Below, in pieces: positions 9,496 through 37,683 of a DNA stretch of 64,000 nt. The stretch spans positions 124,001 through 188,000 of the IMG/VR virus record IMGVR_UViG_3300009184_000029. One strand, given 5' to 3'. The notes below the pieces were generated by a model. That model saw only the letters and a list, made by a program, of their open reading frames with translations, was not told the origin of the DNA and ran no database searches. Within the stretch, counting starts at the first letter, position 1. The number at the start of each line of letters is the position of its first letter. Made by a program: the position numbers and the translations under genes.

Positions 9496-12276
9496 ATGAT
9501 ATCTAACGAAGAAATTGAAAATTTCCTACAAGGAAATGACGATGAAAAATACATCATCGGAGTAGAATACGATTATGTCAAAGATTGTGTTTGGAAAATA
9601 ATAGAACACCCACTTCATGGAAAACAAATTAAGAAAGATACTTTTATCCCATTTGCATGGGTTGGTGACTTACGTGGGTTAAACTTCTATCAATCATCAA
9701 AAGCATTACAGAAAGAAGCGATGACAAAACATAAGATTGTCATTGAAAAATTACGTACAGACGGAAATGAAAGATTGGAGAAAGGTTTGACATTTATGGT
9801 TAAATCCCTAAATGGTTATCGTTCTTTAATACAATTCTTTAGAGATGGTGGTGTTGACCCATGGGGTGAAAGAACTAAAGGATTAATCCTTATCCTACCT
9901 CCTGTTGAACAATTTTTGGTTACAAAAGAAAAACGACTATTTAAAGGATTTGATGATTACAATAGTATCACAAGGTTTGTATTTGACTTGGAGACGACCG
10001 CATTAGAACCAAAGGATGGTCGTATCTTTATGATAGGGATAAAAACCAATAAAGGTTTTAGTCAGGTAATTGAGTGTTCAACTGAAGAACAAGAAAGAGA
10101 CGGTATTATCAAATTTTTTAATACTATAGATGAACTTAAACCAAGTATCATTGCATCTTACAACGGATTTAACTTTGACTGGTTTTGGATATTTGAAAGG
10201 GCAAAATCATTAGGATTAGACATTAAGAAAGTGGCTAAAACTCTTAATCCAATTAACCCAATCAAACAATCTGAAAGTATGTTAAAACTTGCAAACGAGG
10301 TTGAGAGATTTAATCAGACATCTATGTGGGGGTATAATGTTGTGGACACATTACACGCAGTTAGAAGAGCCCAAGCAATTAATTCGTCTATCAAGTCTGC
10401 GGGTTTGAAGTATATTACCCAATATATTAAGGCAGAAGCCGCTGACCGTGTTTATATTGACCACACAGATATTGGTCCGTTTTATGCGAAAAAAGAAGAG
10501 TATTGGTTAAATATCCAAAACGGAAAATATAAGAAAGTGGGAGTTGACCCCACAATTGACGAAGCGTGTTCTAAACATTCAAATGTTTATATTAAAACAA
10601 CGGGTGATAATTTGGTTGAACGATATCTTGACGATGACTTGGAGGAAACTCTAACAGTTGATGAAGAATTCAATCAGGGGTCATTTCTACTTGCATCTTT
10701 GGTCCCAACAACATATGAAAGGGTTTCTACTATGGGAACTGCAACATTATGGGAAATCCAAATGAGAGCTTGGTCATACAAACATATGTTAGCAATTCCT
10801 AAAAAGAATGAAAAGACAGAATTTGTGGGAGGGTTATCCCGACTACTTAAAGTAGGATATTCAACAGACGTATTGAAACTTGACTTCTCGTCACTTTATC
10901 CTTCAATACAACTTGTTCATGATGTATTCCCAACTTGTGATATTACAGGAGCGATGAAGGGAATGTTAAATTACTTCCGTAATACACGTATCAAGTATAA
11001 AAACTTGGCAAAGGAATATGCAGATATTGATAAGAAACAATCAACATCTTACGATAGAAAACAATTACCGATTAAAATTTTCATCAACTCGATGTTCGGG
11101 GCACTATCAGCTCCACAGGTATATCACTGGGGTGATATGTATATGGGTGAACAGATTACTTGTACAGGTCGACAATATTTACGTCAGATGTTAAGATTTT
11201 TTATGAAACGAGGTTATACAGCATTAGTATGTGATACGGATGGTATGAACTTCTCATTACCTGAAGGTGGCGTGGATGATAGAACTTATATCGGTAAGGG
11301 TAAAAATTGGTTAGTTAAGGAAGGTAAGGAATACAAAGGATTTGATGCGGATGTTGCCGAGTTTAATGATATGTTTATGAAAGGTGCAATGGGTCTTGAT
11401 TGTGATGGGACTTGGAAGTCCTGTATGAATATTGCTCGTAAGAACTACGCAACAATGGAACATAATGGTAAGATTAAACTAACAGGTAATTCTATTAAGA
11501 GTAAAAAACTACCCCTGTATATTGAAGACTTCTTGGATAAAGGGATTAAGATGCTACTCGAAGGTAATGGACAAGATTTTGTTGAATGGTATTACGAATA
11601 CTTGGAAGTAATCTTTAACCAACAGATTCCGTTAATGAAAATTGCCCAAAGAGCAAAGGTTAAATTATCAATTGACGATTATAACAAACGTTCAAAAGAA
11701 AAAACCAAAGCGGGTAATGAAATGTCTCGTATGGCACATATGGAATTAGCAATTAGAGATGGAATTGCAGTTAGTTTAGGGGATGTAATATTCTATGTAA
11801 ATAATGGTCTTAAAGCATCACACGGGGATGTTCAGAAAGTTAACGATAAAATGAGTAAGAAAGATAAGGACGCTTACATTGCTCTACACGGAAAACCTCC
11901 TGTTTTAGGTTCAACTATCCAACTTAATTGTTACCGTCTTAACCCATCTGAATTAGAATCAAATCCTAATATGACAGGTGAATATAACATAGCCAGAGCT
12001 ATTGTGACTTTTAATAAAAGAATTGAACCGTTGTTAATTGTATTTGGTGAAGAAGTTAGAAATAATCTAATTGTTAGTGACCCTAAAGACAGAGGTTTGT
12101 TTACCAAACAACAATGTAAATTAATCAATGGTATACCGTTTGAAAATGGTGACCAAGATAGTATTGAGGATTTGTTAACTATTACAGAACAAGAAAAAGT
12201 ATATTGGGGTAAACGAGGAATCGACCCTGAATACATTTACGAATTAGCTGAAGAAGGATGGGAGGATATGGTATAA
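9496..12276 (+). CDS. Family B DNA polymerase with 3'-5' exonuclease
   Basis: ExoI FDLETT, ExoII YNGFNFD, ExoIII YLDDD, motif A DFSSLYPS, motif B KIFINSMFG, motif C CDTDG, KNYA; ATG 9496 preferred to TTG 9442. Confidence 0.95.
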   Translation: MISNEEIENFLQGNDDEKYIIGVEYDYVKDCVWKIIEHPLHGKQIKKDTFIPFAWVGDLRGLNFYQSSKALQKEAMTKHKIVIEKLRTDGNERLEKGLTFMVKSLNGYRSLIQFFRDGGVDPWGERTKGLILILPPVEQFLVTKEKRLFKGFDDYNSITRFVFDLETTALEPKDGRIFMIGIKTNKGFSQVIECSTEEQERDGIIKFFNTIDELKPSIIASYNGFNFDWFWIFERAKSLGLDIKKVAKTLNPINPIKQSESMLKLANEVERFNQTSMWGYNVVDTLHAVRRAQAINSSIKSAGLKYITQYIKAEAADRVYIDHTDIGPFYAKKEEYWLNIQNGKYKKVGVDPTIDEACSKHSNVYIKTTGDNLVERYLDDDLEETLTVDEEFNQGSFLLASLVPTTYERVSTMGTATLWEIQMRAWSYKHMLAIPKKNEKTEFVGGLSRLLKVGYSTDVLKLDFSSLYPSIQLVHDVFPTCDITGAMKGMLNYFRNTRIKYKNLAKEYADIDKKQSTSYDRKQLPIKIFINSMFGALSAPQVYHWGDMYMGEQITCTGRQYLRQMLRFFMKRGYTALVCDTDGMNFSLPEGGVDDRTYIGKGKNWLVKEGKEYKGFDADVAEFNDMFMKGAMGLDCDGTWKSCMNIARKNYATMEHNGKIKLTGNSIKSKKLPLYIEDFLDKGIKMLLEGNGQDFVEWYYEYLEVIFNQQIPLMKIAQRAKVKLSIDDYNKRSKEKTKAGNEMSRMAHMELAIRDGIAVSLGDVIFYVNNGLKASHGDVQKVNDKMSKKDKDAYIALHGKPPVLGSTIQLNCYRLNPSELESNPNMTGEYNIARAIVTFNKRIEPLLIVFGEEVRNNLIVSDPKDRGLFTKQQCKLINGIPFENGDQDSIEDLLTITEQEKVYWGKRGIDPEYIYELAEEGWEDMV

Positions 12277-12278
12277 AT

Positions 12279-12593
12279 CTATGACAGTTTTAATCCGTCA
12301 GAAGATAATATATACCAATTCGTGAACGCGAATAAAAATTCAACACATGCACCTTTACCTAAATTTAATTCATTGAACTCTTCGTCGATTAATCCTTCTT
12401 TTGTCACTATTTTAGTTTCACCTAAAGATTTAATTACGACATGATTGTTTTTTGAACTATCTAAAATAATTTTTGTTGAGTTTTTAGTTATGACAACAGA
12501 TTCACCATTAATTGTGTATTCTTCAGAATCAGTGATTACCACATCTGAACTTTTTATTGTTTTTTCAATTATTGGTGAATAAAGATTGGCCAT
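12279..12593 (-). CDS. Small beta-rich hypothetical protein
   Basis: 104-aa ORF coupled to the neck gene; converges on polymerase stop. Confidence 0.6.
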   Translation of the reverse strand: MANLYSPIIEKTIKSSDVVITDSEEYTINGESVVITKNSTKIILDSSKNNHVVIKSLGETKIVTKEGLIDEEFNELNLGKGACVEFLFAFTNWYILSSDGLKLS

Positions 12594-12595
12594 AA

Positions 12596-13717
12596 TTATA
12601 TAACGTAAATATTTCTTTGGAAAGCTCTTGTTTTCATTTGTTTTTGAAGATTTTCAGCCATTAGAGCCTCTCTTTCCAATATTTTTTCAGGTCTTAATCT
12701 TGTCAGCTTACCTTCAGCCCCTGTTAGTTCTTCAACTAATTTTAACTTTTCATCTTTACCTTCAGTACTTAAAGTTTGCCATTCTAATGTTAATTCAGAA
12801 TCAGGAGTTTTCAAACTACCACTGTACTTACCTCTAACTTTAGATAATGTTTCTTTAACTGACGCAATAAAATATTTTCTAACCCAGTTTTGAGCGGGTG
12901 AATTTAAGTCTACCCAAGAAAGTGTTTCTAAAGGTACATCAGATGGTAATTTTATAATATCGGGGTTCGCTTTTAAACAACTCGCTCTATCTTTTCCTTC
13001 GGTATCATAATACCAATACCAAACTTTACCATTCATTAAATCTGCATTTCCAAAATCAAATTTACCTCCAGGTGTTTGCATAAGATGAATTGCCTTTTTA
13101 CCATCAGGTAATGCAGTAATCCTGTAAGTTTTATCTCCGGCAATTATCCTTCTTTGTATGTTAATTTCTTGCATTCTTAACATCATATCAAATGCTGGCA
13201 TCATGAAGTATGAACCTGAATATCCCATTTGAGAATATCCCGCAGGACCACCAAAACCTCCGCCCCCTAATCCCCCAAAACTCCAAGGGTCGAATAAAAT
13301 GTTATTTTGAGATGGAGGTGTAAACCACAATAATTCATTAACTTCTCTATTTGCTGGAATCTCATAAATTTGTCTGTGCCTTTCAAGTTGGATATAGTCT
13401 TTTTTTAAAACCCAATCTCCTCCAGCTTGTAGACCGACTATTTTAGAATATGCATGAGTATATCTGTCCTCATAATCAAAACTTCTAGTTACAAATGCTC
13501 TTGCCAATGAACTAGTATCCATGTTAAGATTATATAAAGATGTCCATTGAGAATCGATTAACCAATCGTGAACAAACTGAGAATAGTCACTAATTGAAAA
13601 CTCCAATAGAGTATCCATCTGTTCGTCTTCAATTTCTATCGAACGAAGAGGTGCTCCTAAAATGTGTCTTACTTTAGTGTATAGTTGACTTCTATATGGT
13701 TCTTCAATTATTGTCAT
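12596..13717 (-). CDS. Neck protein (T4 gp13-like head-tail adaptor)
   Basis: N-terminal LGAPLRSIEIEDEQ resembles gp13 LGAPxxxxE; C-terminal WVRKYFIASVKETLSKVRGKY helix; close to gp14/gp15-like genes. Confidence 0.7.
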   Translation of the reverse strand: MTIIEEPYRSQLYTKVRHILGAPLRSIEIEDEQMDTLLEFSISDYSQFVHDWLIDSQWTSLYNLNMDTSSLARAFVTRSFDYEDRYTHAYSKIVGLQAGGDWVLKKDYIQLERHRQIYEIPANREVNELLWFTPPSQNNILFDPWSFGGLGGGGFGGPAGYSQMGYSGSYFMMPAFDMMLRMQEINIQRRIIAGDKTYRITALPDGKKAIHLMQTPGGKFDFGNADLMNGKVWYWYYDTEGKDRASCLKANPDIIKLPSDVPLETLSWVDLNSPAQNWVRKYFIASVKETLSKVRGKYSGSLKTPDSELTLEWQTLSTEGKDEKLKLVEELTGAEGKLTRLRPEKILEREALMAENLQKQMKTRAFQRNIYVI

Positions 13718-13722
13718 ATTAT

Positions 13723-13729
13723 ATAAATA
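13723..13729 (-). promoter_or_regulatory. TATTTAT putative late promoter
   Basis: ATAAATA on + strand, 5 nt before ATG 13717. Confidence 0.55.
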
Positions 13730-14440
13730 TTACTCAGTTTTTTTAGTGTACGTTGTGTACAGTTCATCAACAAATTTCCAATTAATTGCGTCCCAAAAGT
13801 TTTCAATATAACTGTCTTTTTTGTTTTGATATTTTAAATAAAATGCGTGTTCCCACAAGTCTAATCCAAGTATAGGGTATCCACCTTTATCGTATATATT
13901 CATTAATGGGTTTTCTTGGTTTTGGGTTGACATAACTTTCAGTCTACCACTTTTAGTAACCACTAACCAAACCCAACCTGAACCAAATCTATTTTTAGCG
14001 ACTTTTTCAAATCTTTTTTTAAATTCTGCGTAAGTACCAAAATATTTTTTAATTTCTTTGAGAACTATTCCGTATGGTTTTTGTGGTGTTGGAGATAACA
14101 TCTTCCAAAATAGAGCGTGGTTAAATGCTCCACCCGCATTATTTTTTATAGTTGTATTATATTTTGATATTTGTTTGACAATCTCAATTAGTTCAACATC
14201 TCCATAATCTTTTTTTCTTAACGCTGAATTTAATTTTTTAACATACCCCTTATAATGTTTTTGATAATGAAACTTCATAGTTTCAGGGTCAATAAATCTT
14301 CTTATAGATGAATAAGAATATGGTAATTTATCAATACCAATAGTTCTCATTTCATTAATGAAAAATTTAGGACCAAATTCAGGATTACCTAAGTTGATTT
14401 TTTTCTCTAAAGATTCAGTTATTATGTTGAGATATTTCAT
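13730..14440 (-). CDS. sodA: Fe/Mn superoxide dismutase (Mn-type signatures) with N-terminal extension
   Basis: LPYSY, HYQKHYKGY, NNAGGAFNHALFW, FGSGWVWL, TQNQENP, DLWEHAFYLKY; GG and NQ are Mn-type signatures; ATG 14440 preferred. Confidence 0.9.
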   Translation of the reverse strand: MKYLNIITESLEKKINLGNPEFGPKFFINEMRTIGIDKLPYSYSSIRRFIDPETMKFHYQKHYKGYVKKLNSALRKKDYGDVELIEIVKQISKYNTTIKNNAGGAFNHALFWKMLSPTPQKPYGIVLKEIKKYFGTYAEFKKRFEKVAKNRFGSGWVWLVVTKSGRLKVMSTQNQENPLMNIYDKGGYPILGLDLWEHAFYLKYQNKKDSYIENFWDAINWKFVDELYTTYTKKTE

Positions 14441-14445
14441 CAACA

Positions 14446-14452
14446 ATAAATA
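14446..14452 (-). promoter_or_regulatory. TATTTAT putative late promoter
   Basis: ATAAATA on + strand, 5 nt before SOD ATG 14440. Confidence 0.55.
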
Positions 14453-14453
14453 C

Positions 14454-16196
14454 TTACTTATTGTTAATTTCGTTTAATATCTGTTCGACAATATCCCCTG
14501 TATTTTCAGAATCTCCCATTACAGTTTCAATTATTTGTTTTTTCTTTGTTAAGATATCGTAAATAACACCTTCAATTGTGTTATCAAACAATGGGTAGAA
14601 TATTGATACATTATTTTTTTGACCGTATCTATAGGCCCTATCTTCGGCCTGTGAATGGTCTGAGGGTACAAAAGATAAGTCATTCATAATAACGGCTTCT
14701 GCCTCAGTCAAAGTTAATCCAACACCCGCAGCTTTAATATTACCACAGAAAACTCTGATTTTATCGTTTGTTTGGAATTTGTCTACAGCGTCTTGTCTTG
14801 CGGGTTTAGAAGTTGAACCATCTAAATAAACAGAAGATTTACCAAAATGTTCATGAATCTTTTTAATCGGTTCTGTAAAATTACTAAAAATAATTACTTT
14901 TTTACCTTGTTCAATAATGTTTTCAGCAATTTCAATAGTGTGTTCTATTTTTTCTTCAGCAATTACTTGTCTGACTTTAGTTAGTTTTGAAAATTGAATT
15001 GTTAAAGATTTTGATTCTTCAATTCTATTATTGTACCAATCATAGTATTCTCCCATTAATCCCTCATATAATCGAGACTTCAATCTCAAATAAACAGGTG
15101 TTATTATTTTATCAGGTAAATCTAATACTTCAGTTTTTAATCTCCTTAAAATTTGTCTAGAAGTTCTATCCCTTAATTCTTCTAAATTTGATGCTCCTGT
15201 TACATTCCAAACTTTTTTACTACCGACTCTGAATTGATAACCATTACAGTACCTAATCGCATACGCCATCCAATTTTGACTAACAGGACTATCAATTAAT
15301 TTTAACAAATTATAATAGTTCATAGGTCTAGAGGTCATTGGGGTTCCTGTTAATAACCATAACTTTTTAACCTGTTTACAGATATCCATTATAATTTTAG
15401 TCCTTTGTGCTTGTGGATTTGAAACATAATGTGCTTCATCAATGATTATTAAATCAAACTTAGATTTAACCAACAATGAATTTTCATTATCCTTAGGGTC
15501 ATGGAAATTTTTTAAAATATCATAGTTTGATATTATATAATCTGAATCTTCAAATTTTTTACCCTCACATATGTATATTGACCTATCAGTATAATTTCTA
15601 ATTTCTCTTTCCCAATTTAATTTTAAAGATGCGGGACATATAATAAGAATTTTTTTAGCACCACTTTCTAAAGAAGCAATTATGGTTGAGGTAGTTTTAC
15701 CTAAACCCATATCGTCGGCTAAAATAAATTTATCATTTTTTAATAATCTTTCTATCGCCTCTTTTTGATGAGACAATGGGGGTCTGTTATCGTATTTTGA
15801 ATAATCTACGTTAACTTCATTTTCTTTATGTTCCTTAATTATTGCGGCTTTCGGTATCCAAAAATCGTGGATAGTGTCACCACTAAAAATTTTACCCCAT
15901 ATATGATATGCTTTATCCTTCTCAACTAATAATTTCTCAATGTAGATTTTGTCAGGTTCTTTAATAAACGGATTGTCTTCAACAAGTTTTGTGGAAAAAT
16001 AAGAATCGATTGGGACCCATTTTTTTGCAACTTTTGGAGTTACCTCATGATAATTTATAACATAATCACATTGAGCTCTTGTAGGTATGTTTTTTTTAGA
16101 CACCTCAATTTGCTTCTTAATTTTAAGAATGTAATTATTGGAACCATTATAAGATTCTAAAATTTCGATTGCTTGTTGTTCAATACTTATTGCCAT
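14454..16196 (-). CDS. SNF2/SWI2-family helicase-like ATPase (SMARCAL1/HARP-like)
   Basis: ILADDMGLGKT, ICPASLKLNW, DEAH, LLTGTP, AAGVGLTL, QAEDRAYRYGQ. Confidence 0.92.
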   Translation of the reverse strand: MAISIEQQAIEILESYNGSNNYILKIKKQIEVSKKNIPTRAQCDYVINYHEVTPKVAKKWVPIDSYFSTKLVEDNPFIKEPDKIYIEKLLVEKDKAYHIWGKIFSGDTIHDFWIPKAAIIKEHKENEVNVDYSKYDNRPPLSHQKEAIERLLKNDKFILADDMGLGKTTSTIIASLESGAKKILIICPASLKLNWEREIRNYTDRSIYICEGKKFEDSDYIISNYDILKNFHDPKDNENSLLVKSKFDLIIIDEAHYVSNPQAQRTKIIMDICKQVKKLWLLTGTPMTSRPMNYYNLLKLIDSPVSQNWMAYAIRYCNGYQFRVGSKKVWNVTGASNLEELRDRTSRQILRRLKTEVLDLPDKIITPVYLRLKSRLYEGLMGEYYDWYNNRIEESKSLTIQFSKLTKVRQVIAEEKIEHTIEIAENIIEQGKKVIIFSNFTEPIKKIHEHFGKSSVYLDGSTSKPARQDAVDKFQTNDKIRVFCGNIKAAGVGLTLTEAEAVIMNDLSFVPSDHSQAEDRAYRYGQKNNVSIFYPLFDNTIEGVIYDILTKKKQIIETVMGDSENTGDIVEQILNEINNK

Positions 16197-16219
16197 ACAT
16201 CAATAAATGATATCAATTA

Positions 16220-16248
16220 ATAATAAATGAAAATTGGATATTTATCAA
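16220..16248 (-). promoter_or_regulatory. Putative sigma70-like promoter of SNF2 gene
   Basis: Minus strand TTGATA(16248-16243)-N17-TATTAT(16225-16220). Confidence 0.4.
16239..16245 (+). promoter_or_regulatory. TATTTAT putative late promoter
   Basis: 4 nt before ATG 16250. Confidence 0.55.
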
Positions 16249-16249
16249 T

Positions 16250-16765
16250 ATGTCAAATAGAAATGTACCAATTACAAGATTAGGAAAATTTTTTAGTGAG
16301 AAAGATTATGATTTAGAAGTCCGAATGGGAGAAGAATGGCTTTTAGGTGATATGAATTTTACATTAGTTTTATACGCAATTGATAGACAAAAAACTAAAA
16401 CTGACGATGTTTACGGTGAAACTCTAAGTGATGGAATTAAATTTAAACCTCCTGTAGAATTTAAAGGACTTGTACAAGTTAATGCACCTGAAAATAAATT
16501 TTTAGGTAATTCAAAAATAAATCAGGTTGAACCAGGAAATGTTAGAATTTCGATTTATTTAAAACATTTGGAAGATTTGGAAATTGATATAAATTTTGGA
16601 GATTACATTGGTTATTATGAAACTGAAAATAAAGTTAGATACTATGTAGTTAATAATGACGGTAGAGTTACTTCAGACAATAAACACACATATGCAGGTT
16701 ATAAACCTTATTACAGAACAATATTGGCGTCACCTGTAACTGAAAATGAATTTAGAGGATTATAA
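16250..16765 (+). CDS. Neck/head-closure protein (T4 gp14-like)
   Basis: DDVYGE motif, size and position between gp13-like and gp15-like genes. Confidence 0.55.
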   Translation: MSNRNVPITRLGKFFSEKDYDLEVRMGEEWLLGDMNFTLVLYAIDRQKTKTDDVYGETLSDGIKFKPPVEFKGLVQVNAPENKFLGNSKINQVEPGNVRISIYLKHLEDLEIDINFGDYIGYYETENKVRYYVVNNDGRVTSDNKHTYAGYKPYYRTILASPVTENEFRGL

Positions 16766-17805
16766 TGTCGTTACCAAAAAAAGTAGTACCTAATTTGTCA
16801 TTGGTTAATCCTAAGACTGGATTATCAAGAAGAGAAGAACTTTTGGAAAGAATCCAAGAGGGGGGTACCTTTTTACCAAAGTCAATTTTACACGAAGATT
16901 TAGATAAAGGTTTTTTAGATTTTGTTAAAAATGATTTAAAATTAGTTGTAAGTGGAAAATTAGTACCTACTGTTGATATAATCATAACAACTCAAAATTG
17001 GGCTCAATTTACACAAACTTGGAATTTTCAAAATATTGATAAGAATGCGGAACCACCATTCATAACCGTAGTTAGAAGTCCTGAGGGTAAGTATGGTAGT
17101 ACACCATCATTACAATATAGAATACCTAATTCAAGACAATTTTTTTACGCTGCGGTACCAACATGGAATGGGGATAGAAAAGGGTTAGATGTATATACCA
17201 TACCACAACCAATTCCTATTGATTTAACTTTTAGTATTAAAATAATTTGCAACAGAATGAGAGAGTTAAACTCATTTAATAAAATTATTTTAGGCAAATT
17301 TTCATCAAGACAATCTTACACAAATGTTAAAGGACATTATATACCAATAATATTAAACAGTATTAGTGACGAATCTGTAAATGATTTGGAAAAGAGAAGA
17401 TATTATTCCCAAAGTTACGATTTTACAATGATGGGATTTTTAATTGATGAGGATGAATTTGAGGTTAAACCTGCGGTTAGTAGAGCATTACAATTGATTG
17501 AAGTTGATAATTCAAAAAAATTAAAAAGACCTAAAAAGTTCCCAAAAAATCCTGATACCTTTGATTTTAATTTTAATTTTAGTTCTTCTGATGATTCTCA
17601 AACACAGACAATAGAATATACATCTACTTTAAAAAATATATCCACAAATAATGTTACCACGTATTCAGTTTATATTAATAGTATTTTCTTTGGTGATAAT
17701 GTTAGTGAAATATGGATAAATCAAGGAGACACTTTAACTATTGAAATTACTAAAACAGTTTTGGGACAAGAGTCTTCTGTTAATTTTTCAGGAACGTTAA
17801 ATTAA
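16765..17805 (+). CDS. Tail terminator/sheath stabiliser (T4 gp15-like)
   Basis: PFITVVR...PIPIDLTFSIKI...MRELNSF pattern; precedes sheath. Confidence 0.55.
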   Translation: MSLPKKVVPNLSLVNPKTGLSRREELLERIQEGGTFLPKSILHEDLDKGFLDFVKNDLKLVVSGKLVPTVDIIITTQNWAQFTQTWNFQNIDKNAEPPFITVVRSPEGKYGSTPSLQYRIPNSRQFFYAAVPTWNGDRKGLDVYTIPQPIPIDLTFSIKIICNRMRELNSFNKIILGKFSSRQSYTNVKGHYIPIILNSISDESVNDLEKRRYYSQSYDFTMMGFLIDEDEFEVKPAVSRALQLIEVDNSKKLKRPKKFPKNPDTFDFNFNFSSSDDSQTQTIEYTSTLKNISTNNVTTYSVYINSIFFGDNVSEIWINQGDTLTIEITKTVLGQESSVNFSGTLN

Positions 17806-17951
17806 CCCTCTCCATATATGTCCGAATCAAGGACACAATTTTTTCTAATTAATTTCTCAACAAACTTATTAATCTTCAAACCTTTTTTTTCACAGTATTT
17901 TTTCAACACTTTATGGGTGTCTTCTGAGATTTTTAAGTTCTTAATGTTCAT
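17802..17951 (-). CDS. Ribbon-helix-helix DNA-binding protein (49 aa, missing from ORF track)
   Basis: Read manually: MNIKNLKISEDTHKVLKKYCEKKGLKINKFVEKLIRKNCVLDSDIYGEG*; strand-helix-G-helix pattern of CopG/Arc-type RHH. Confidence 0.7.
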   Translation of the reverse strand: MNIKNLKISEDTHKVLKKYCEKKGLKINKFVEKLIRKNCVLDSDIYGEG

Positions 17952-17988
17952 ACAATATAAGTATGAATAAAAGATATTTTTTTCATAC
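17947..17988. promoter_or_regulatory. Triple 7-bp repeat operator candidate
   Basis: TTCATAC(17947-53)-N7-GTATGAA(17961-67)-N14-TTCATAC(17982-88), overlapping the RHH start codon and a TACTTAT promoter variant. Confidence 0.55.
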
Positions 17989-18038
17989 CATATTATTTTA
18001 ATTACACTGAAAGTAAAGGTTTTTGTATTTTTTCAAAG

Positions 18039-18045
18039 TATTTAT
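18039..18045 (+). promoter_or_regulatory. TATTTAT putative late promoter (sheath)
   Basis: 30 nt before ATG 18076, followed by A-rich leader. Confidence 0.55.
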
Positions 18046-18075
18046 GCAATAAATAAAAAGAAATAAAACAATAAA

Positions 18076-21000
18076 ATGGCAGAATCTAATAAAGTTTTCG
18101 TATCTCCAGGTGTATATACATCGGAAAGAGACTTGTCGTTTGTAGCTCAAAGTGTGGGGGTTACAACATTAGGTATTGTTGGTGAAACCTTAAAAGGGCC
18201 AGCATTTGAACCTATCTTTATTACAAGTTATGATGAGTTTTCAACCTATTTTGGTGGAACTTCAGCTGAAAAATTTGTAAATACACAAATTCCTAAATAT
18301 GAATCGGCGTACATTGCTAAGTCATACTTACAACAATCAAATCAATTATTTGTAACAAGAGTACTTGGTTTATCAGGGTATGATGCAGGTCCTTCATGGT
18401 CAATTAAAACAATCGCAAATCCTGATGTTACAACTATGGGATTAAACGGTACCGGAACGTCATATTCCGTAGCGTTCTCAGGAAACACTGGTGGAACATA
18501 TAATTATGTTAGTTCATTCCCATCAATAATTGAATCTAATAGAACTGCAACATATACAACATTTGCTGGAGGTTCATCTACAATCCAAGAATCATTAAAT
18601 ACTTTAATTACAACTTTTCTTGGTAATGTATCGACATCAGCGAACACAATTTATTATTTTGGACCTGTTTCAGGCTATAGTGCATTAGCATCATCGTATA
18701 CTGCGGACACTAATGTATTTGGTGTGGATACCGAATCAACTGCAACAATAAATTACGCTTCAGGTACAAATGACTCTTGGTTCTACTCTAACTGGTCCCC
18801 AACAACAGGAAATGCTTACACGGGATATTCTTTCTATAGTGTGATTACAAATACAAGCGGAGCGACTGCAGGAACTTACACAGGTACTGTGTCAGGAAGA
18901 TACTATCAATTTAGTGGTACTGCTTATGTAGACTATAACAATTTAGTAATTGCAACTTTACGTTCAAGAGGTATTTCAACATACAGTAGTACTAATGGAC
19001 CAACTTATCAAGTTTCAGGAGTGAATAACGTATCATTAATTACGACAGGTTCTTATTCAGGTGTAAGTGAAAATCCATATCTAACATTTAAAGTTAGTGG
19101 TTCAACAATTGAAAATACAAACTTTGAATTTGAAACATCTTTAGATGATAATGATACAAGTTATATGAATAAAGTTTTTGGAAGAACTAACTTCGCAAAA
19201 GACAGAACTACAGTTCCATTATTTGTTGAGGAAATTTATCCAACTATGTTGTCATACGGTTACAATCAAGGATATATCAGAGGTATCAGTTCTAATTTAG
19301 TTAGTTTAAACAGTGCTAGAAGTGCGACTTCAACATCAATTGGTAACTATACTGAAAGATATCAAACCCCAGTTACTCCTTATTTAGTTTCTGAATTAAG
19401 AGGTAATAAAGTTTATCAGTTATTTAGATTTGTTTCAATATCTGACGGTAATGATGCTAATACAGAAATTAAAGTATCTGTTGCTAACATGTCATTTAAT
19501 AACTTAACATTTGATGTTATAGTTAGAGATTTCTATGACACAGATGCTAACCCTGTAGTATTAGAGAAATTTACGAACTGTACAATGGACCCTAATGAAA
19601 ATAGTTTTGTTGGTAAGAAAATTGGTTCTTCTGACGGGGAGTACGCAATAAATTCTAAATTTATAATGGTTGAGGTTAATCCTGAAGCACCAACAACGGC
19701 AATTCCTTGTGGTTTTGAAGGTTATAATACAAGACAATACTCAACTTACCCAACAAACTTACCTCCATTCCCAATTTTAAAAACTAAATACGATTTTCCT
19801 GGTGAAATTATCAGTAATCCTCCATTTGGTTCTACTTCAGGGGATGATGCTGTTACATCAGCAGGTGATAATGTAAGAAGAACTTATTTAGGTTTCTCTA
19901 CTAAAGTTGGTGTTGATACTGATTTCTTACAATATAAAGGTAAGATAAATCCTTCAAATCTTTGTACGGCAACTGAATACGACCAATGGGGTGTAAGAAC
20001 TCAAGGTTTCCACATGGATAGTGGAGCAACTGTAATTACTATCGGAACTTCATTTACAACTTCAGGTGACCCAGCGTTTGATTGTGGTGTGGCATCATTC
20101 CAATCAGAACCAACAACTGAATCAAATCCTTACTACAGATTATATTCTCGTAAGTTCACACTTGTATTCCAAGGAGGTTTTGATGGATGGGACATCTATA
20201 GAGAAAATAGAACAAACCAAGATAGATTTGCATTGGGTGGTTCAGGATTTTTGGCAGGAGCTTGTTCTTCTACAAGATACCCAACCGCATCAGGTAAACT
20301 ATTTAAATCAATAACTGTAGGTGACAACTCAACTGATTGGGCTAATACTGACTACTACGCATACTTATTGGGTATTAGTACTTTCTCAAACCCTGAAGCG
20401 GTTAACATTAACTTGTTTGTTACACCTGGCGTTGATTATACTAATAATAGTGGTGTTGTGGAATACGCGATTGATATGGTTGAGAATGACAGAGCGGATT
20501 CATTGTATATTACGACAACTCCTGACTTTAATTTATATCAACCATCAACAGATATCAGTAATTTAATTTACCCACAAGAAGCGGTTGATAACTTGGAAAC
20601 TACAGGATTAGATTCTAACTATACCGCAACTTACTACCCTTGGGTATTAACAAGAGATACTGTAAATAACACTCAAATTTATTTACCAGCAACCGCTGAG
20701 GTAACAAGAAACTTAGCATTAACCGACAACATTGCGTTCCCTTGGTTCGCAGCCGCGGGTTATACAAGAGGTATTGTAAATGCAGTTAAAGCTCGTAAAA
20801 AGTTAACTCAAGAAGATAGAGATACTCTTTATAAAGGAAGAATTAACCCAATCGCTACTTTCAATGATGTTGGAACTGTAATTTGGGGTAACAAAACTTT
20901 ACAAGTAAGAGAATCAGCTTTAGATAGAATTAACGTAAGAAGATTGTTATTACAAGCACGTAAATTGATTTCAGCGGTAGCTGTAAGGTTATTGTTTGAA

Positions 21001-21300: not shown

Positions 21301-22125
21301 ATGAAATTGTATATCGTCGAAAAAATGGATGAAAAAAATACACCCGATATGGATTATTGGGCGTTTGATTGGGATGATAATATTATGATTATGCCAACTA
21401 AAATTGTTGTTAAAGACTCTAATGGTAAGGAAATTGGAATGTCAACTGAAGATTGGGCAGAATATAAAGATATTGTTGGTAAAGAAGATTTTGAATATGA
21501 AGGTCATACTATTGTAGGTTTGGCAAATAACCCTTTTAGATATTTTAGGACTGAATATGATAAAATGTTCACAATAGATGCTATGTTAGGTAAATTAGGT
21601 CCTGCTTGGGATGACTTTAAAAACGCAATAAATGGAGGTTCTATTTTTGCAATCATCACTGCTAGAGGACATTCTCCATTAAAGATAAGAAGTACCATTG
21701 AAAAAATGATTGACGGTAATTTCAGGGGTATTTCTAAAAAAGAACTTGTTAAAAATTTAAGAAAGTATAGAAGTATTGCTGGTGAAGAAGATATGCCTGA
21801 TGATAAGTTAATTGACGCTTACATGGATATGAATAGATATTATCCTGTGACTTTTGAATCGGGAAGTGTCCAATCTCCGGCGGAATTAAAAAATGAAAAA
21901 TTAAGAGAGTTTGAGGAGTATGTGAAATATATCGCTAATATTGTTCATAAACCTGCACACTTTAAAAATATGGTTTCAAATAAATTTGCACCAGTGATAC
22001 ATTTTTCAGATGACGATGAAACTAATTTAGAATATTCATATAAGAGAAACAAAGACAGACCAGATAACATTATTAATTATGTTACTACCAAAGGAGGAGT
22101 TAAAAAACCTTATGAATTAAAATAA
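21301..22125 (+). CDS. HAD-superfamily hydrolase/phosphatase
   Basis: Motif I AFDWDDN, motif II IITARG, motif III Lys, motif IV FSDDD. Confidence 0.75.
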   Translation: MKLYIVEKMDEKNTPDMDYWAFDWDDNIMIMPTKIVVKDSNGKEIGMSTEDWAEYKDIVGKEDFEYEGHTIVGLANNPFRYFRTEYDKMFTIDAMLGKLGPAWDDFKNAINGGSIFAIITARGHSPLKIRSTIEKMIDGNFRGISKKELVKNLRKYRSIAGEEDMPDDKLIDAYMDMNRYYPVTFESGSVQSPAELKNEKLREFEEYVKYIANIVHKPAHFKNMVSNKFAPVIHFSDDDETNLEYSYKRNKDRPDNIINYVTTKGGVKKPYELK

Positions 22126-22196
22126 ATAATTTGCTAGGTATATTGCAATTATCCCCAAAAAAAAACTAAAGTAAATAAAAAATCTTTTTATTGGTA

Positions 22197-22208
22197 TATT
22201 TATAAATA
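22197..22208 (+). promoter_or_regulatory. TATTTAT putative late promoter (tube), inside palindrome TATTTATAAATA
   Basis: 31 nt before ATG 22235, A-rich leader. Confidence 0.55.
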
Positions 22209-22234
22209 AATAAAACGAAAAAAAATTAAATGAT

Positions 22235-22723
22235 ATGGCAGATTTGCTAATGAAAATGCCCGTACCTTACGAGCCAAAAAGACAGAATAGATTTATTCTA
22301 AGATTTCCGTCTTCGTTGGGTATTAACGAATGGTTCGTACAAGCAGCGTCAAGACCAACTATAACAATCGGTTCAACTCCGATTCCGTTTTTGAATACTG
22401 AAACATATGTTGCAGGAAGATTTAAGTGGAGTACTATACAAGTTACATTTATTGACCCAATCGGTCCTTCGGCGTCTCAAGCTTTGATGGAATGGGTTAG
22501 ATTACACGCTGAGTCTGTTACAGGTCGTATGGGATACGCCGCAGGTTATAAGAAAAATGTTGATTTAGAAATGTTAGACCCAACAGGAGTTGTGATTGAA
22601 AAGTGGATTTTGGAAGGTTGTTTTATAACAAACGCTGGTTTCGGGTCACTTGGTTACGCTAATGAAGGTTTGGTTAATATTCAGGTAACACTACAACCTG
22701 ATAGATGTATTTTAGTTTACTAA
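22235..22723 (+). CDS. Tail tube protein (T4 gp19-like)
   Basis: YEPKRQNRF, AGRFKWSTIQVTFIDP, EWVRL, GYKKNV, LDPTGVVIEKWILEG; 162 aa downstream of sheath. Confidence 0.9.
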   Translation: MADLLMKMPVPYEPKRQNRFILRFPSSLGINEWFVQAASRPTITIGSTPIPFLNTETYVAGRFKWSTIQVTFIDPIGPSASQALMEWVRLHAESVTGRMGYAAGYKKNVDLEMLDPTGVVIEKWILEGCFITNAGFGSLGYANEGLVNIQVTLQPDRCILVY

Positions 22724-22747
22724 AAAATTAATTACTATTATATTTTT

Positions 22748-22774
22748 AAAAAAGTCCTTAATGGGCTTTTTTTT
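22748..22774 (+). terminator. Intrinsic terminator after tube
   Basis: AAAAGTCC-TTAAT-GGGCTTTTTTTT. Confidence 0.7.
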
Positions 22775-22817
22775 GTTTACAAATAATTTTTTAAGTATAC
22801 TTTTTTAATAAAAAAAA

Positions 22818-23570
22818 ATGGACGCGAAACAAGCTGGACAAATGGATTTTAATTTACCACATGATGTGGTAGAGTTACCTTCAAGAGGGATTTTTTATAA
22901 ATCTAAGAAAAAATCTTTAAAGGTTGGTTATTTAACGGCAAATGATGAAAATATTTTGGCTAACGCTCGTAAAAACGGGGGACAAAATATTATCCAATCA
23001 TTATTAAGAAGTAAAATATATGAAACCGAAATTAAACCTGAAGAATTATTATCAGGTGATGTTGAGGCAATCCTTATCTTTTTAAGAAATACTTCATTTG
23101 GACCTGAATATACTTTTGAGGTTGCTGATGACGATGGTAAGAAGTTTGAAACAACTGTAACTATCGATGAATTAAATATAAGAAAACCCGAAGTGAATCC
23201 AAATGAAGACGGGACTTTTACAACGACATTACCAAAGTCAGGTTATTCTGTAAAATTAAGACCACTTACTTTTGGTGAAAATGTCGATTTAGAAAAAATG
23301 GAAGATTCATATCCGACTGGACTTGTCGCTCCGACAATAACATGGAGATTAAATAAAATGATTGTTGAGGTTAATGGAGATAGTAATATGGAGACAATTT
23401 CTTCATTTATTAATAATTTACCTATTATGGACTCTAAATATATTAGAAGTTTCATTGACATAAACGAACCAAAGTTAGACTTAGCAAGAGAAGTATTTAC
23501 CCCGTCAGGAAAAAGGAAGAAAGTATTAGTTTCCTTTGGGGTTGACTTTTTTCGGCCTTTCTTCAGCTAG
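22818..23570 (+). CDS. Tail/baseplate-hub assembly chaperone (T4 gp26-like)
   Basis: VELPSRG, LTANDENIL, GDVEAILIFLR...GPEY, C-terminal DFFRP; located between tube and tape measure. Confidence 0.75.
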   Translation: MDAKQAGQMDFNLPHDVVELPSRGIFYKSKKKSLKVGYLTANDENILANARKNGGQNIIQSLLRSKIYETEIKPEELLSGDVEAILIFLRNTSFGPEYTFEVADDDGKKFETTVTIDELNIRKPEVNPNEDGTFTTTLPKSGYSVKLRPLTFGENVDLEKMEDSYPTGLVAPTITWRLNKMIVEVNGDSNMETISSFINNLPIMDSKYIRSFIDINEPKLDLAREVFTPSGKRKKVLVSFGVDFFRPFFS

Positions 23571-23709
23571 TCTAGAAAATCATATTTACGAGTATTATAT
23601 TTTAGCTCACTATTTACGGACATCATATTCTGACTTTATGTCTATGCCAAGTTATTTTAGGAAGACCCTAATAAGTAAGGTTATAGAAAAAAATAAAAAA
23701 ACAGATTAG
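23548..23709 (+). CDS. +1-frame extension of chaperone (gp51/GT-like), probably via programmed frameshift
   Basis: FFGLSSASLENHIYEYYILAHYLRTSYSDFMSMPSYFRKTLISKVIEKNKKTD*; no 5' ATG; overlaps slippery TTT TTT CGG. Confidence 0.6.
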   Translation, partial: FFGLSSASLENHIYEYYILAHYLRTSYSDFMSMPSYFRKTLISKVIEKNKKTD

Positions 23710-23711
23710 GG

Positions 23712-23718
23712 TATTTAT
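23712..23718 (+). promoter_or_regulatory. TATTTAT putative late promoter
   Basis: 16 nt before ATG 23735. Confidence 0.5.
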
Positions 23719-23734
23719 TTTATAAAGAACTTAT

Positions 23735-30678: not shown

Positions 30679-30679
30679 A

Positions 30680-31006
30680 ATGGCTAACGAATATTTTAAT
30701 AGATATCAGCAATTTACAATAAATGGACAACAAAAAACTGTTCCATTTGTGACGTTACCAACAAAAAGTACTGATATTAGACATATATACAAAGTCGGTA
30801 GCTCAAGGTTGGACAAGATATCACAACAATATTATGGTACACCATTTTTTGGATGGTTAATTATGATGGGTAATCCATCTTTTGGTGGTTTAGAGTGGAA
30901 TATACCTGATGGTACCGCAATACGAATTCCATTTCCTTTAGTGTCAAGTTTATTAGATTATAATAGTCAATTAGACAAATATTTTTTATATTATGGCAAA
31001 GACTGA
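30680..31006 (+). CDS. LysM/tail-X-like baseplate protein (gp53-like)
   Basis: RLDKISQQYYGTPFFGWLIMMGNP...IPDGTAIRIP. Confidence 0.75.
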   Translation: MANEYFNRYQQFTINGQQKTVPFVTLPTKSTDIRHIYKVGSSRLDKISQQYYGTPFFGWLIMMGNPSFGGLEWNIPDGTAIRIPFPLVSSLLDYNSQLDKYFLYYGKD

Positions 31007-37409: not shown

Positions 37410-37438
37410 TTACTTTTGAAATTTTATAATAACATTGA

Positions 37439-37445
37439 TATTTAT
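37439..37445 (+). promoter_or_regulatory. TATTTAT putative late promoter
   Basis: 13 nt before ATG 37459. Confidence 0.5.
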
Positions 37446-37458
37446 ATAAAAAAAAGTT

Positions 37459-37683
37459 ATGGACATTAAAACTGCAATTAATAATTATCTTGGTAAACAA
37501 GCAAGAATTACTGAAAAGGATAATGGTAATGGATTTAAAGAAGTTTGTGATTTAGATACTGGAGATTGTTATACAGTAAGAATGAAAGATGGTCTTATTG
37601 AAAGAGTTGACAACACATATCAAACAAACAAAAAAATAAAAGTAGAAACTAATAACGGATTTAAACAACTTCTAAATGGCTAA
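37459..37683 (+). CDS. Small hypothetical protein
   Basis: 74 aa, CDLDTGDC motif, overlaps next start. Confidence 0.6.
   Translation: MDIKTAINNYLGKQARITEKDNGNGFKEVCDLDTGDCYTVRMKDGLIERVDNTYQTNKKIKVETNNGFKQLLNG

What the first reader, a model, noticed from the sequence alone, without database searches (positions are those of the whole stretch)
13730..14452. Late-expressed Mn-SOD with N-terminal propeptide-like extension: possible virion-packaged antioxidant
Seen: intact SOD ligands, about 30 extra N-terminal residues (MKYLNIITESLEKK...FFINEM) before the LPY start of the SOD fold, its own TATTTAT element, and a position directly upstream of the neck gene. Known: T4 prohead protease gp21 cleaves after (I/L)-x-E in internal head proteins. 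Inference: ITE/INE sites mark a capsid-targeting leader, so the SOD may be packaged to protect the genome or be ejected into the host, rather than acting as an ordinary early auxiliary metabolic gene.
Basis: partly seen in the sequence, partly recalled or inferred. Interest (0 to 1): 0.7.

Follow-up and report, generated by a model that had tools for sequence, protein, structure and literature searches.

The report
Phage SOD with capsid-targeting-like leader
A giant freshwater T4-like phage encodes an intact manganese superoxide dismutase with a 30-residue N-terminal leader that over a hundred related phages share and cellular enzymes lack; the leader looks like the cleavable tags phage T4 uses to load proteins into its head, so the enzyme is probably virion cargo, but no experiment shows this yet.

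Summary
Window 13730-14440 (-) encodes a 236-aa Mn-type Fe/Mn SOD with all four metal ligands. It has 30 extra N-terminal residues, a TATTTAT element 5 nt before its ATG, and a T4 gp13-like neck gene directly downstream.

- The phage is a ~290-kb freshwater jumbo myovirus with a T4-type head module, including a gp21-type prohead protease. Its capsid protein aligns I-N-E|A onto T4 gp23's cleavage site.
- The SOD sits between an SNF2 helicase and gp13 in 78 of 80 related loci.
- The leader evolves fast (30% identity against 72% for the core) yet keeps two (I/L)-x-E sites. One lies near the N-terminus. The other (E30 invariant, P3 I/L, P2 free) lies exactly where canonical SODs begin.
- Relatives fuse other domains to the SOD through linkers dense in (I/L)-x-E.
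- Natural variants exist with the SOD but no leader, and with the leader but no SOD.
- TATTTAT precedes structural genes and not replication genes.
- The nearest cellular SODs carry signal peptides instead.

No proteomic evidence exists. A cytoplasmic role or attachment to the neck remains possible.

The parts
13730..14440 (-). Mn-type Fe/Mn superoxide dismutase gene, 236 aa plus stop
   Evidence: ORF list and Pfam Sod_Fe_N and Sod_Fe_C. Alignment to solved Mn-SODs. Ligands H58, H108, D194, H198 invariant in 70 homologues.
14351..14440 (-). Codons 1-30: N-terminal leader. An amphipathic helix (M1, K2, L4, L11, I15 conserved), a variable charged linker, then F-F-I-N-E.
   Evidence: Translation. 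Mean pairwise identity 0.30 against 0.72 for the core. AF2 pLDDT about 50 for helix 2-17 and under 50 for residues 15-21. No hydrophobic stretch.
14414..14422 (-). I-T-E (residues 7-9): first candidate prohead-protease site
   Evidence: 101 of 102 distinct leaders have an [LI]xE in their first 18 residues, against 53.6 +/- 4.7 in shuffles. T4 Alt starts MELITE and T4 IPI's propeptide ends in ITE.
14351..14359 (-). I-N-E (residues 28-30): second candidate site, at the boundary with the canonical SOD fold (M31 onward)
   Evidence: E30 invariant in 70 of 70. P3 is I or L in 100 of 102. P2 takes 8 different residues. The same tripeptide aligns with T4 gp23 E65|A66 in this phage's capsid protein.
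14446..14452 (-). TATTTAT promoter-like element, 5 nt before the SOD ATG
   Evidence: Sequence. Present within 40 nt upstream of the SOD ORF as called in 66 of 78 related loci. Linked to structural genes.
13723..13729 (-). TATTTAT element, 5 nt before the gp13-like gene's ATG
   Evidence: Sequence. Conserved in relatives.
12596..13717 (-). T4 gp13-like neck (head-tail adaptor) gene, 373 aa
   Evidence: PHROG 211, E 9e-8. PF26809 on orthologues. Direct BLAST to T4 gp13 gives only weak, mostly collinear local matches, E 0.13.
12279..12593 (-). Conserved 104-aa ORF that ends the four-gene minus-strand block; function unknown
   Evidence: Present in the same position in relatives. No family hit. 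No similarity to T4 gp14.
14454..16196 (-). SNF2-family helicase, first gene of the block
   Evidence: Pfam SNF2-rel_dom and Helicase_C; PHROG 62.
16220..16256 (-). Sigma-70-like promoter region upstream of the helicase (TTGACA; TTGATA-17-TATTAT). Possible source of read-through into the SOD.
   Evidence: No terminator-like site anywhere in 11900-16400.

Best explanation
The SOD is an active Mn-type enzyme that this jumbo T4-like phage lineage treats as head cargo.

Shown: the gene, its ligands, its 30-residue leader, its conserved position and its conserved TATTTAT element.

Inferred mechanism:
1. The gene is transcribed with the structural genes from its own TATTTAT promoter, and possibly also earlier by read-through from the helicase promoter.
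2. The amphipathic leader docks the protein onto the prohead core.
3. The gp21-type prohead protease cuts after (I/L)-x-E, at I-T-E9 and/or I-N-E30. This releases a canonical-length SOD starting at M31 inside the head.
4. The enzyme then travels in the virion. It most plausibly enters the next host with the DNA to blunt superoxide early in infection, as T4 Alt and the internal proteins are delivered.

In relatives the same locus is a modular cargo cassette. The SOD is fused to other domains through linkers rich in (I/L)-x-E, which would be cut apart in the same way.
For: 1. T4-type head machinery: Portal_T4, Peptidase_S77 (E 3e-25) and Gp23 (E 2e-72). The capsid protein's HLINE|AATT aligns with T4 gp23's FLTE|AEIG cleavage site. 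The 237-aa core protein has 5.9 [LI]xE sites per 100 aa, against 1.3 genome-wide.

2. T4 rule, from the literature: gp21 cuts after L/I-X-E; N-terminal propeptides are 7-65 aa; capsid-targeting sequences are 10-19 aa; Alt is cut at both ends (PMC9026906). T4's own N-termini, read from its record: Alt MELITE, IPI ...STITE|A, gp24 MAKINE|LLRE|S.

3. Leader sites are conserved while the leader itself turns over. E30 is invariant, P3 is I or L in 100 of 102, and P2 is free. 101 of 102 leaders have an early [LI]xE, against 54 expected from shuffles.

4. The cut after E30 falls exactly at the start of the canonical fold.

5. The leader is modular. L085 has the SOD with residues 1-30 cleanly deleted. 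L091 keeps the leader on another domain with the SOD deleted.

6. Of 70 distinct linkers after the SOD domain, 69 have at least one [LI]xE and 56 have at least two, at 6.9 per 100 aa.

7. Fusion partners exist as separate genes in this genome. One (HExxH, genome 79386-79772) lies in the head module.

8. TATTTAT lies upstream of 8 of 13 structural genes and 0 of 9 replication genes (p = 0.0055). In a complete relative the counts are 9 of 13 and 0 of 9 (p = 0.0017).

9. [LI]xE within the first 12 residues occurs in 71 of 257 ORFs against 29 expected, and is linked to TATTTAT. This is replicated in the relative.

10. The SOD is near-universal at this locus: 78 of 80 loci.

11. Precedent: the SOD-like gp223 of jumbo phage PA5oct carries the 'ESI-MS/MS' note and starts MNDSIKKYISIAE|AASS just before its SOD fold. 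PBCV-1's Cu/Zn SOD is late and packaged (PMC7019647).
Against: - There is no proteome, N-terminus or expression timing for this uncultured lineage.
- The homologues are related by descent, so the counts are not independent events.
- E30 sits inside a longer conserved block (F26-Y43, 74% identity). That block could be structural or a binding site rather than a cleavage site.
- [LI]xE is short, and a heptad-patterned helix rich in L, I and E may produce it for other reasons.
- If every early-[LI]xE ORF were cargo there would be dozens, which is many.
- No T4 gp55, gp33 or gp45 homologue was found, so 'late' rests on motif association alone.
- Read-through from the helicase promoter is possible.
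- A folded SOD dimer with its metal would have to unfold to pass through the tail tube.
- The leaderless natural variant shows the leader is dispensable for at least some phages.
Confidence: 0.45

Rival explanations
1. The SOD is an ordinary intracellular auxiliary enzyme. It is made during infection to keep superoxide down while virions assemble. The N-terminal helix is never cleaved. It serves oligomerisation, regulation or local tethering, and the enzyme is not packaged.
For: - Phage-borne Fe/Mn SODs occur sporadically elsewhere.
- The leader has a heptad-like pattern (L4, I8, L11, I15) typical of helix-helix contacts.
- The conserved block spans both sides of E30.
- Read-through from a sigma-70-like promoter is possible.
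Against: - It does not explain why P3 and P1 are kept while P2 varies.
- It does not explain why the boundary coincides exactly with the canonical N-terminus.
- It does not explain why the leader survives on a non-SOD protein in L091.
- It does not explain why fusion linkers are 5-fold enriched in [LI]xE.
- It does not explain why the gene is fixed next to the neck gene with a structural-class promoter in 78 of 80 loci.
Confidence: 0.25
2. The SOD is a virion protein displayed outside the head, on the neck or collar. Its N-terminal helix anchors it to gp13 and the neck. It occupies the position that fibritin (wac) holds just upstream of gene 13 in T4.
For: - The gene order wac-13-14 in T4 parallels SOD-gp13-104aa here.
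- The adjacency is conserved.
- The SOD and gp13 each have their own TATTTAT.
- The amphipathic N-terminal helix and the modular C-terminal additions resemble a fibre or decoration locus.
Against: - In many relatives the 'leader' is internal, behind an N-terminal HExxH domain.
- There is no similarity to fibritin.
- The double [LI]xE pattern is left unexplained.
Confidence: 0.12
3. The extension is an annotation artefact: translation really starts at Met31 (MRTIGIDKLPY...), giving a normal SOD.
For: Met31 would give a textbook SOD N-terminus. One natural variant (L085) starts there. T4 gene 21 itself has an internal start, so a second, short isoform is conceivable.
Against: - Residue 31 is Ala in 12 of 70 homologues.
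- The leader frame is open in 77 of 78 loci, with conserved pattern positions.
- TATTTAT sits 5 nt before the first ATG, not before Met31.
- A perfect-match contig from a lake metatranscriptome covers 14252-14417 (weak).
Confidence: 0.05
4. The extension is a secretion signal or membrane anchor, as in the nearest cellular SODs, sending the enzyme to the periplasm.
For: The closest non-phage relatives (42-49% identity) carry Sec, TAT or lipoprotein signals.
Against: The leader is charged and has no hydrophobic core; the highest 11-residue Kyte-Doolittle mean is 0.76. It does not align with those signals, which start only at query residue ~35.
Confidence: 0.02

Closest known systems
T4 internal head proteins and Alt (capsid targeting sequence plus gp21 processing)
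   Same: - A T4-type prohead protease is present.
- A short N-terminal leader ends in (L/I)-x-E; T4 Alt is MELITE and IPI is ...ITE|A.
- The leader is shared by unrelated proteins of one phage.
- An enzyme serves as cargo, as Alt does.
- Cuts occur at both ends or at linkers, as in Alt.
- The cargo is non-essential and the locus is variable.

   Different: - No sequence homology to the T4 CTS MKTYQEFIAE.
- The leader is 30 aa with two sites.
- The cargo is a metalloenzyme of the SOD fold.
- The repertoire of leader-bearing genes is far larger.
- Nothing has been shown biochemically.
Pseudomonas jumbo phage PA5oct gp223 (SOD-like; annotated sodB in its relatives MIJ3 and Callisto)
   Same: - A Fe/Mn-SOD fold protein of a jumbo phage with a T4-like head protease.
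- A short N-terminal extension ending I-A-E|A about 12 residues before the (I/L)PxxPY motif.
- Flagged 'ESI-MS/MS' in the record of a study that analysed purified particles.

   Different: - Only 26% identical.
- The extension is 13-17 aa.
- Not next to the neck gene.
- The paper does not discuss it and lists some 'virion-unrelated enzymes' among its detections, so contamination is not excluded.
Chlorovirus PBCV-1 A245R Cu/Zn SOD (also the Megavirus Cu/Zn SOD and the vaccinia A45R SOD-like protein)
   Same: A virus-encoded SOD that is expressed late, packaged in the virion, and thought to lower superoxide early in the next infection (PMC7019647; PMC10583209).
   Different: An unrelated fold (Cu/Zn). 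These are eukaryotic giant viruses. No protease-cleaved targeting leader is described.
Cellular Mn-SODs with N-terminal targeting peptides (bacterial Sec/TAT/lipoprotein forms)
   Same: The same catalytic fold and ligands. An N-terminal extension that is not part of the fold and acts, or would act, as an address label.
   Different: Cellular extensions are hydrophobic signal peptides. This one is a charged amphipathic helix with (I/L)-x-E sites and is found only in the phage lineage.

Membership tests
Fe/Mn superoxide dismutase (Pfam PF00081 + PF02777) | Both domains present above the curated cut-offs | tested here: met
   74.3 bits (cut-off 27) and 128.9 bits (cut-off 20.9).
Fe/Mn superoxide dismutase (Pfam PF00081 + PF02777) | Four metal ligands (His26, His81, Asp167, His171 in E. 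coli MnSOD numbering; numbering from my own knowledge) | tested here: met
   H58, H108, D194 and H198 align with solved SODs and are invariant in 70 homologues.
Mn-specific subclass | Gly-Gly before the second ligand, and Gln in the C-terminal domain (Fe enzymes have Gln in the N-domain instead) | tested here: met
   NNAGGAFNH and STQNQENP. The best solved matches are Mn or Mn/Fe cambialistic enzymes. Metal use itself is not testable here.
T4-type capsid-targeted, gp21-processed head cargo | The phage encodes a gp21-family (Peptidase_S77) prohead protease | tested here: met
   Genome 73940-74659: Pfam E 3e-25; phmmer to T4 gp21 E 1e-20.
T4-type capsid-targeted, gp21-processed head cargo | An N-terminal propeptide ending in (L/I)-x-E, with conservation that fits P3/P1 specificity | tested here: met
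   ITE9 and INE30. E30 invariant, P3 I or L in 100 of 102, P2 variable.
T4-type capsid-targeted, gp21-processed head cargo | The leader is portable and shared by unrelated proteins | tested here: met
   L091 carries the leader on a non-SOD domain. About 16 ORFs of the genome start MK(Y/L)(L/I)ITESQ-like.
T4-type capsid-targeted, gp21-processed head cargo | Sequence homology to the T4 CTS (MKTYQEFIAE) | tested here: not met
   Only the pattern is shared (M-K start, [LI]xE end); read side by side.
T4-type capsid-targeted, gp21-processed head cargo | The protein is found in virions with the propeptide removed | not testable with these tools
   The lineage is uncultured, and no proteome was found in the literature searches.
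Late (structural-class) gene | Shares the promoter element of the structural genes | tested here: met
   TATTTAT lies 5 nt upstream of the SOD. It precedes 8 of 13 structural and 0 of 9 replication genes, and this is replicated in a relative.
Late (structural-class) gene | Transcribed late and not early | tested here: inconclusive
   There is no terminator after the helicase, which has a sigma-70-like promoter. No time course exists. The RNA libraries only show that the sequence is present.
Secreted SOD (Sec/TAT signal) | A hydrophobic h-region or a twin-arginine motif | tested here: not met
   Hydropathy maximum 0.76, and no RR motif (sequence).

The most novel reading that the evidence does not exclude
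This widespread freshwater jumbo-phage lineage has a greatly expanded, T4-style system of capsid-targeted, protease-released cargo proteins. Dozens of late-promoter genes share MK..(L/I)xE leaders. Next to the neck gene lies a hypervariable polyprotein cassette in which an active Mn-SOD, often fused to a nuclease-like domain or an HExxH domain, is loaded into the head, cut free at (I/L)-x-E linkers, and injected into the next host as an antioxidant first responder.
Probability: 0.3. Interest if true: 0.8.

Novelty: new variant of a known kind. Interest (0 to 1): 0.6.

Why it matters
If true, this would be the first phage shown to carry an antioxidant enzyme as head cargo. It would be the bacterial-virus counterpart of the packaged SOD of chloroviruses.

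It would also show that T4's capsid-targeting and processing trick has been scaled up into a modular delivery system in abundant lake phages. The lineage was found in freshwater, lake, estuary and marine metagenomes from at least 13 studies between 2016 and 2025.

In practice it gives testable cleavage sites, a portable leader for loading foreign proteins into large capsids, and a rule for predicting virion cargo of uncultured phages: a late-type promoter plus an early (I/L)-x-E.

If false, it is still a lineage-defining, vertically inherited phage SOD with an unexplained conserved leader.

Tried and rejected
- Complex prediction of scaffold, 237-aa core protein and SOD returned 'no answer' (score 0.00). 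This is evidence neither way.
- PHROGs has no family for the SOD.
- The phage collection has no near relative of the region. It has none for two of the fusion-partner ORFs and only Synechococcus phage S-SRM01 for the HExxH ORF.
- Pfam on 20 leader-bearing ORFs gave little: one M23 peptidase with a GH19 domain, DUF6576, and weak Annexin and DHH hits.
- The protein atlas only said 'viral hypothetical'.
- T4 gp55, gp33, gp45 and the internal proteins found no homologue by phmmer in this genome or in the complete relative.
- PF26809 is not in the local Pfam copy. Direct BLAST of the 373-aa protein to T4 gp13 is not significant (E 0.13), and the 104-aa ORF does not match gp14. The gp13 assignment therefore rests on PHROG 211 and on precomputed hits of orthologues.
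- The RNA runs are held as contigs only, so no transcript ends or timing could be read.
- Exact TTGACA was not found upstream of the replication genes in the relative; by eye its PolB, SNF2 and SSB upstream regions have TTGACT.
- The freshwater 'Bacteriophage sp.' SOD MW462191 is a canonical enzyme without a leader, among cellular-type genes, and is not comparable.
- The PA5oct paper's supplements are not held, and the MIJ3 paper does not mention the SOD.
- The internal-start and signal-peptide readings were rejected for the reasons given under the rival explanations.

Full report
**What is there**

The finding sits on the minus strand. The ORF runs 13730..14440 from its ATG and encodes 236 aa; a TTG two codons upstream is not used by homologues. 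Pfam finds both Fe/Mn-SOD domains far above their cut-offs, with the N-domain starting at residue 38.

Solved SODs align from query residue 36 to their own residue 4-5. The best matches are Mn or Mn/Fe enzymes. The four ligands (H58, H108, D194, H198), the gateway residues (H62, Y66) and the Mn-type markers (G103-G104, Q175) are present and invariant in 70 homologues. Residues 1-30, MKYLNIITESLEKKINLGNPEFGPKFFINE, are therefore extra.

The helicase stop codon, one G, TATTTAT (14446-14452), TGTTG and then the SOD ATG follow one another directly. After the SOD stop come TATTTAT (13723-13729), ATAAT and the ATG of the next gene.

**The genome**

The window is bases 124001-188000 of a 222,829-bp virus record that is 76% complete and 31% G+C. 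A complete relative is 293,850 bp.

It is a myovirus, with sheath, tube, hub and wedge genes. Its head module is T4-type: large terminase, Portal_T4, a 237-aa core protein, a Peptidase_S77 prohead protease, a 501-aa acidic scaffold and a Gp23 capsid protein. The nearest cultured capsid relatives are Microcystis phage Mel-JY01 and Flavobacterium phage immuto, at 42-43% identity.

The DNA occurs in freshwater, lake, estuary and some marine metagenomes from at least 13 studies between 2016 and 2025.

**The SOD is a fixed gene of the lineage**

More than 100 metagenomic homologues are 60-95% identical and cover the extension. In every context examined the order is sheath ... 171-aa ORF | SNF2 helicase, SOD, gp13-like, ~105-aa ORF | PolB on the other strand.

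I anchored a search on gp13. Of 80 related viral contigs, 78 have the SOD just upstream of gp13. One of the other two has too little flank to tell. TATTTAT lies within 40 nt upstream of the SOD ORF as called in 66 of 78 and is also conserved before gp13.

**The extension is not cellular**

An exhaustive profile search shows a sharp drop from the phage family (at least 58% identity, alignment from residue ~1-25) to everything else (at most 56%, alignment from residue ~35). The nearest non-phage SODs carry Sec, TAT or lipoprotein signals. The phage leader is charged and has no hydrophobic core. Met31 is Ala in 12 of 70 homologues, so it is not the general start.

**Anatomy and evolution of the leader**

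Mean pairwise identity is 0.30 for residues 1-25, against 0.74 for residues 26-43 and 0.72 for the core. Conserved positions are M1, K2, L4, L/I11, I15, F/L27, I/L28, E30 (70 of 70), K32 and I34-G35-I36.

Among 102 distinct leaders, the site that ends at the invariant Glu has I or L at P3 in 100, and eight different residues at P2. In 101 of the 102 there is another [LI]xE within the first 18 residues. Composition-preserving shuffles give 53.6 +/- 4.7, and none of 1000 reached the observed count. The sequences are related, so these are not independent events. Even so, the motif persists through a near-complete turnover of the surrounding residues.

AlphaFold gives a confident SOD core, a low-confidence helix at residues 2-17, a linker under pLDDT 50, and a short helix at residues 24-32.

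**Does the phage use (L/I)-x-E?**

T4 gp21 cuts after L/I-X-E. It removes N-terminal propeptides of 7-65 residues. The 10-19-residue propeptides of the internal proteins are capsid targeting sequences, and Alt is trimmed at both ends (PMC9026906). Read from the T4 record: Alt MELITE|L, IPI ...STITE|A, IPII and IPIII MKTYQEFIAE|A, gp24 MAKINE|LLRE|S, gp23 ...FLTE|AEIGG.

In this phage the capsid protein's HLINE|AATTADSG aligns with T4's FLTE|AEIGGDHG. The 237-aa core protein has 14 [LI]xE sites, or 5.9 per 100 aa against 1.31 genome-wide, as expected of a scaffold that is degraded. The SOD's second site is the same tripeptide as the capsid site. A cut there would leave M31-R-T-I-G-I-D-K-L-P-Y, which is one residue longer than S. 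aureus SodA.

**A modular cassette**

Many relatives fuse the SOD to other domains:
- an N-terminal ~140-aa HExxH domain;
- a ~440-aa N-terminal domain;
- C-terminal additions of 140-680 aa.

Of the 70 distinct linkers after the SOD domain, 69 have at least one [LI]xE and 56 have at least two. The density is 6.9 per 100 aa. The consensus is K-x-K-[LI]-x-E-[ST]-x4-K-x-[LI]-[LI]-x-E, and it precedes several unrelated downstream domains.

The fusion partners exist as separate genes in this genome:
- genome 10935-12083, which starts MRQIIKKILKEE;
- genome 35676-36821;
- the HExxH ORF at 79386-79772, which lies in the head module just after the capsid gene.

The commonest C-terminal partner folds confidently (pLDDT 84.5). 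Its last ~110 residues weakly resemble PD-(D/E)xK nucleases such as I-Ssp6803I and Hjc, at Foldseek E 6e-3.

Two natural variants are telling. L085 is a near-copy of L015/L073 in which residues 1-30 are cleanly deleted, so the protein starts MKKIGIEKLPY. L091 keeps the leader and the C-terminal domain but has lost the SOD domain in frame. The leader is therefore a separable module and not part of the SOD fold.

**Timing**

TATTTAT is the most enriched 7-mer upstream of genes: 70 of 257 genes within 60 nt, 13-fold over expectation. It sits at two preferred distances from the ATG, 4-7 nt and 13-18 nt.

It precedes TerL, the core protein, the protease, the scaffold, sheath, tube, gp13 and a wedge gene. 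It does not precede PolB, the SNF2 helicase, SSB, UvsX, the exonuclease, DnaB or the RNR genes. That is 8 of 13 against 0 of 9 (p = 0.0055), and 9 of 13 against 0 of 9 (p = 0.0017) in the complete relative.

Replication genes instead have TTGACA, or TTGACT in the relative, 55-90 nt upstream. This supports a structural-class promoter for the SOD. However, no T4 late-transcription factor was detected. No terminator separates the SOD from the helicase. The RNA data show only that exact SOD fragments, including the leader codons, occur in lake metatranscriptome libraries. 'Late' is therefore likely, and 'late only' is unproven.

**A wider pattern**

About 16 ORFs of the genome begin MK(Y/L)(L/I)ITESQ-like, and others begin MNLQEHIRRVLREE or MKKVVRLTESDL.... 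An [LI]xE within the first 12 residues occurs in 71 of 257 ORFs against 29 expected (p = 4e-13) and is associated with TATTTAT (odds ratio 2.7, p = 0.001). The complete relative repeats this: 75 of 383 against 47 expected, odds ratio 3.4, p = 1.5e-5. Paralogy inflates these numbers. The SOD's MKYLNIITESLEKKI resembles the MKYLITESQLEKVI family, but its own leader lineage is inherited with the SOD.

**Precedents**

The PA5oct study analysed purified particles. The protein begins MNDSIKKYISIAE|AASSVKKIPIPY, which is an I-A-E|A site just before the fold. The paper does not discuss it. Chlorovirus PBCV-1 packages a late Cu/Zn SOD.

**Verdict**

The most likely reading (about 0.45) is a T4-style, protease-released head cargo. 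Three rivals remain: an uncleaved cytoplasmic enzyme (0.25); a neck-displayed protein, given that the locus mirrors wac-13-14 of T4 (0.12); and an internal start (0.05). The complex prediction gave no answer. The decisive data are proteomic.

Noticed in passing
G000:C1 about 10,000-60,000 (outside the window); e.g. 21303-24741, 15278-20598, 28537-37616: Families of small ORFs share N-terminal leaders (MKYLITESQL..., MNLQEHIRRVLREE..., MKKVVRLTESDLIKLVKRVIREE...) on otherwise unrelated proteins. The amino acids are conserved across synonymous codon changes. Many are preceded by TATTTAT.
   Followed up: partly
whole genome; in the window e.g. 14446-14452, 13723-13729, and upstream of 16250 and 46710: In 34 upstream occurrences TATTTAT ends only 4-7 nt before the ATG. 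If it is a -10-like element, those mRNAs would be leaderless or nearly so. No Shine-Dalgarno-like sequence was evident.
   Followed up: partly
G000:C1:37618-38811 (+): A 397-aa protein with a Peptidase_M23 domain and a GH19 (chitinase/lysozyme-like) domain starts MKLIITETQLKYLITEG, i.e. with two [LI]xE sites. It is either a candidate virion-borne cell-wall hydrolase or the endolysin.
   Followed up: no
G000:C1:79386-79772 (+), just after the capsid gene: A 128-aa ORF with an HExxH motif. In many relatives it is fused to the N-terminus of the SOD. The only hit in cultured phages is a hypothetical protein of Synechococcus phage S-SRM01.
   Followed up: partly
L091:4091-4975 and L085:1981-3012: These are natural deletion variants of the cassette: leader plus C-terminal domain without the SOD (L091), and SOD without the leader (L085).
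   Followed up: yes
L091:4091-4975 (model mc87c8a7e263b) and the C-terminal halves of the 511-512-aa SOD fusions: The commonest domain fused after the SOD has a conserved GID...QIKP motif and a weak fold match to PD-(D/E)xK nucleases (I-Ssp6803I, Hjc, the SPARDA nuclease).
   Followed up: partly
window 25771-30678, 30993-37409, 49056-55583, 60248-63736: Very large ORFs (1635, 2138, 2175 and 1162 aa) lie among the baseplate genes with no PHROG match. They are presumably baseplate or fibre proteins.
   Followed up: no
G000:C1:76576-78378 (capsid gene): The capsid protein is 600 aa, against 521 in T4. Matches to Gp23 and to cultured phages come in two pieces covering about 55% of it, which suggests an inserted domain of roughly 200 residues after the propeptide region.
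   Followed up: no
window 16220-16256, and upstream of 9442, 38401 and 39325: TTGACA (TTGACT in a relative), a -35-like box, lies 55-90 nt upstream of the replication and recombination genes. This marks a second promoter class distinct from TATTTAT.
   Followed up: partly
L118:1935-2483 (PA5oct gp223): An SOD-like protein of a cultured jumbo phage is annotated 'hypothetical' yet flagged as detected by ESI-MS/MS. It has an I-A-E|A motif right before the SOD fold.
   Followed up: partly
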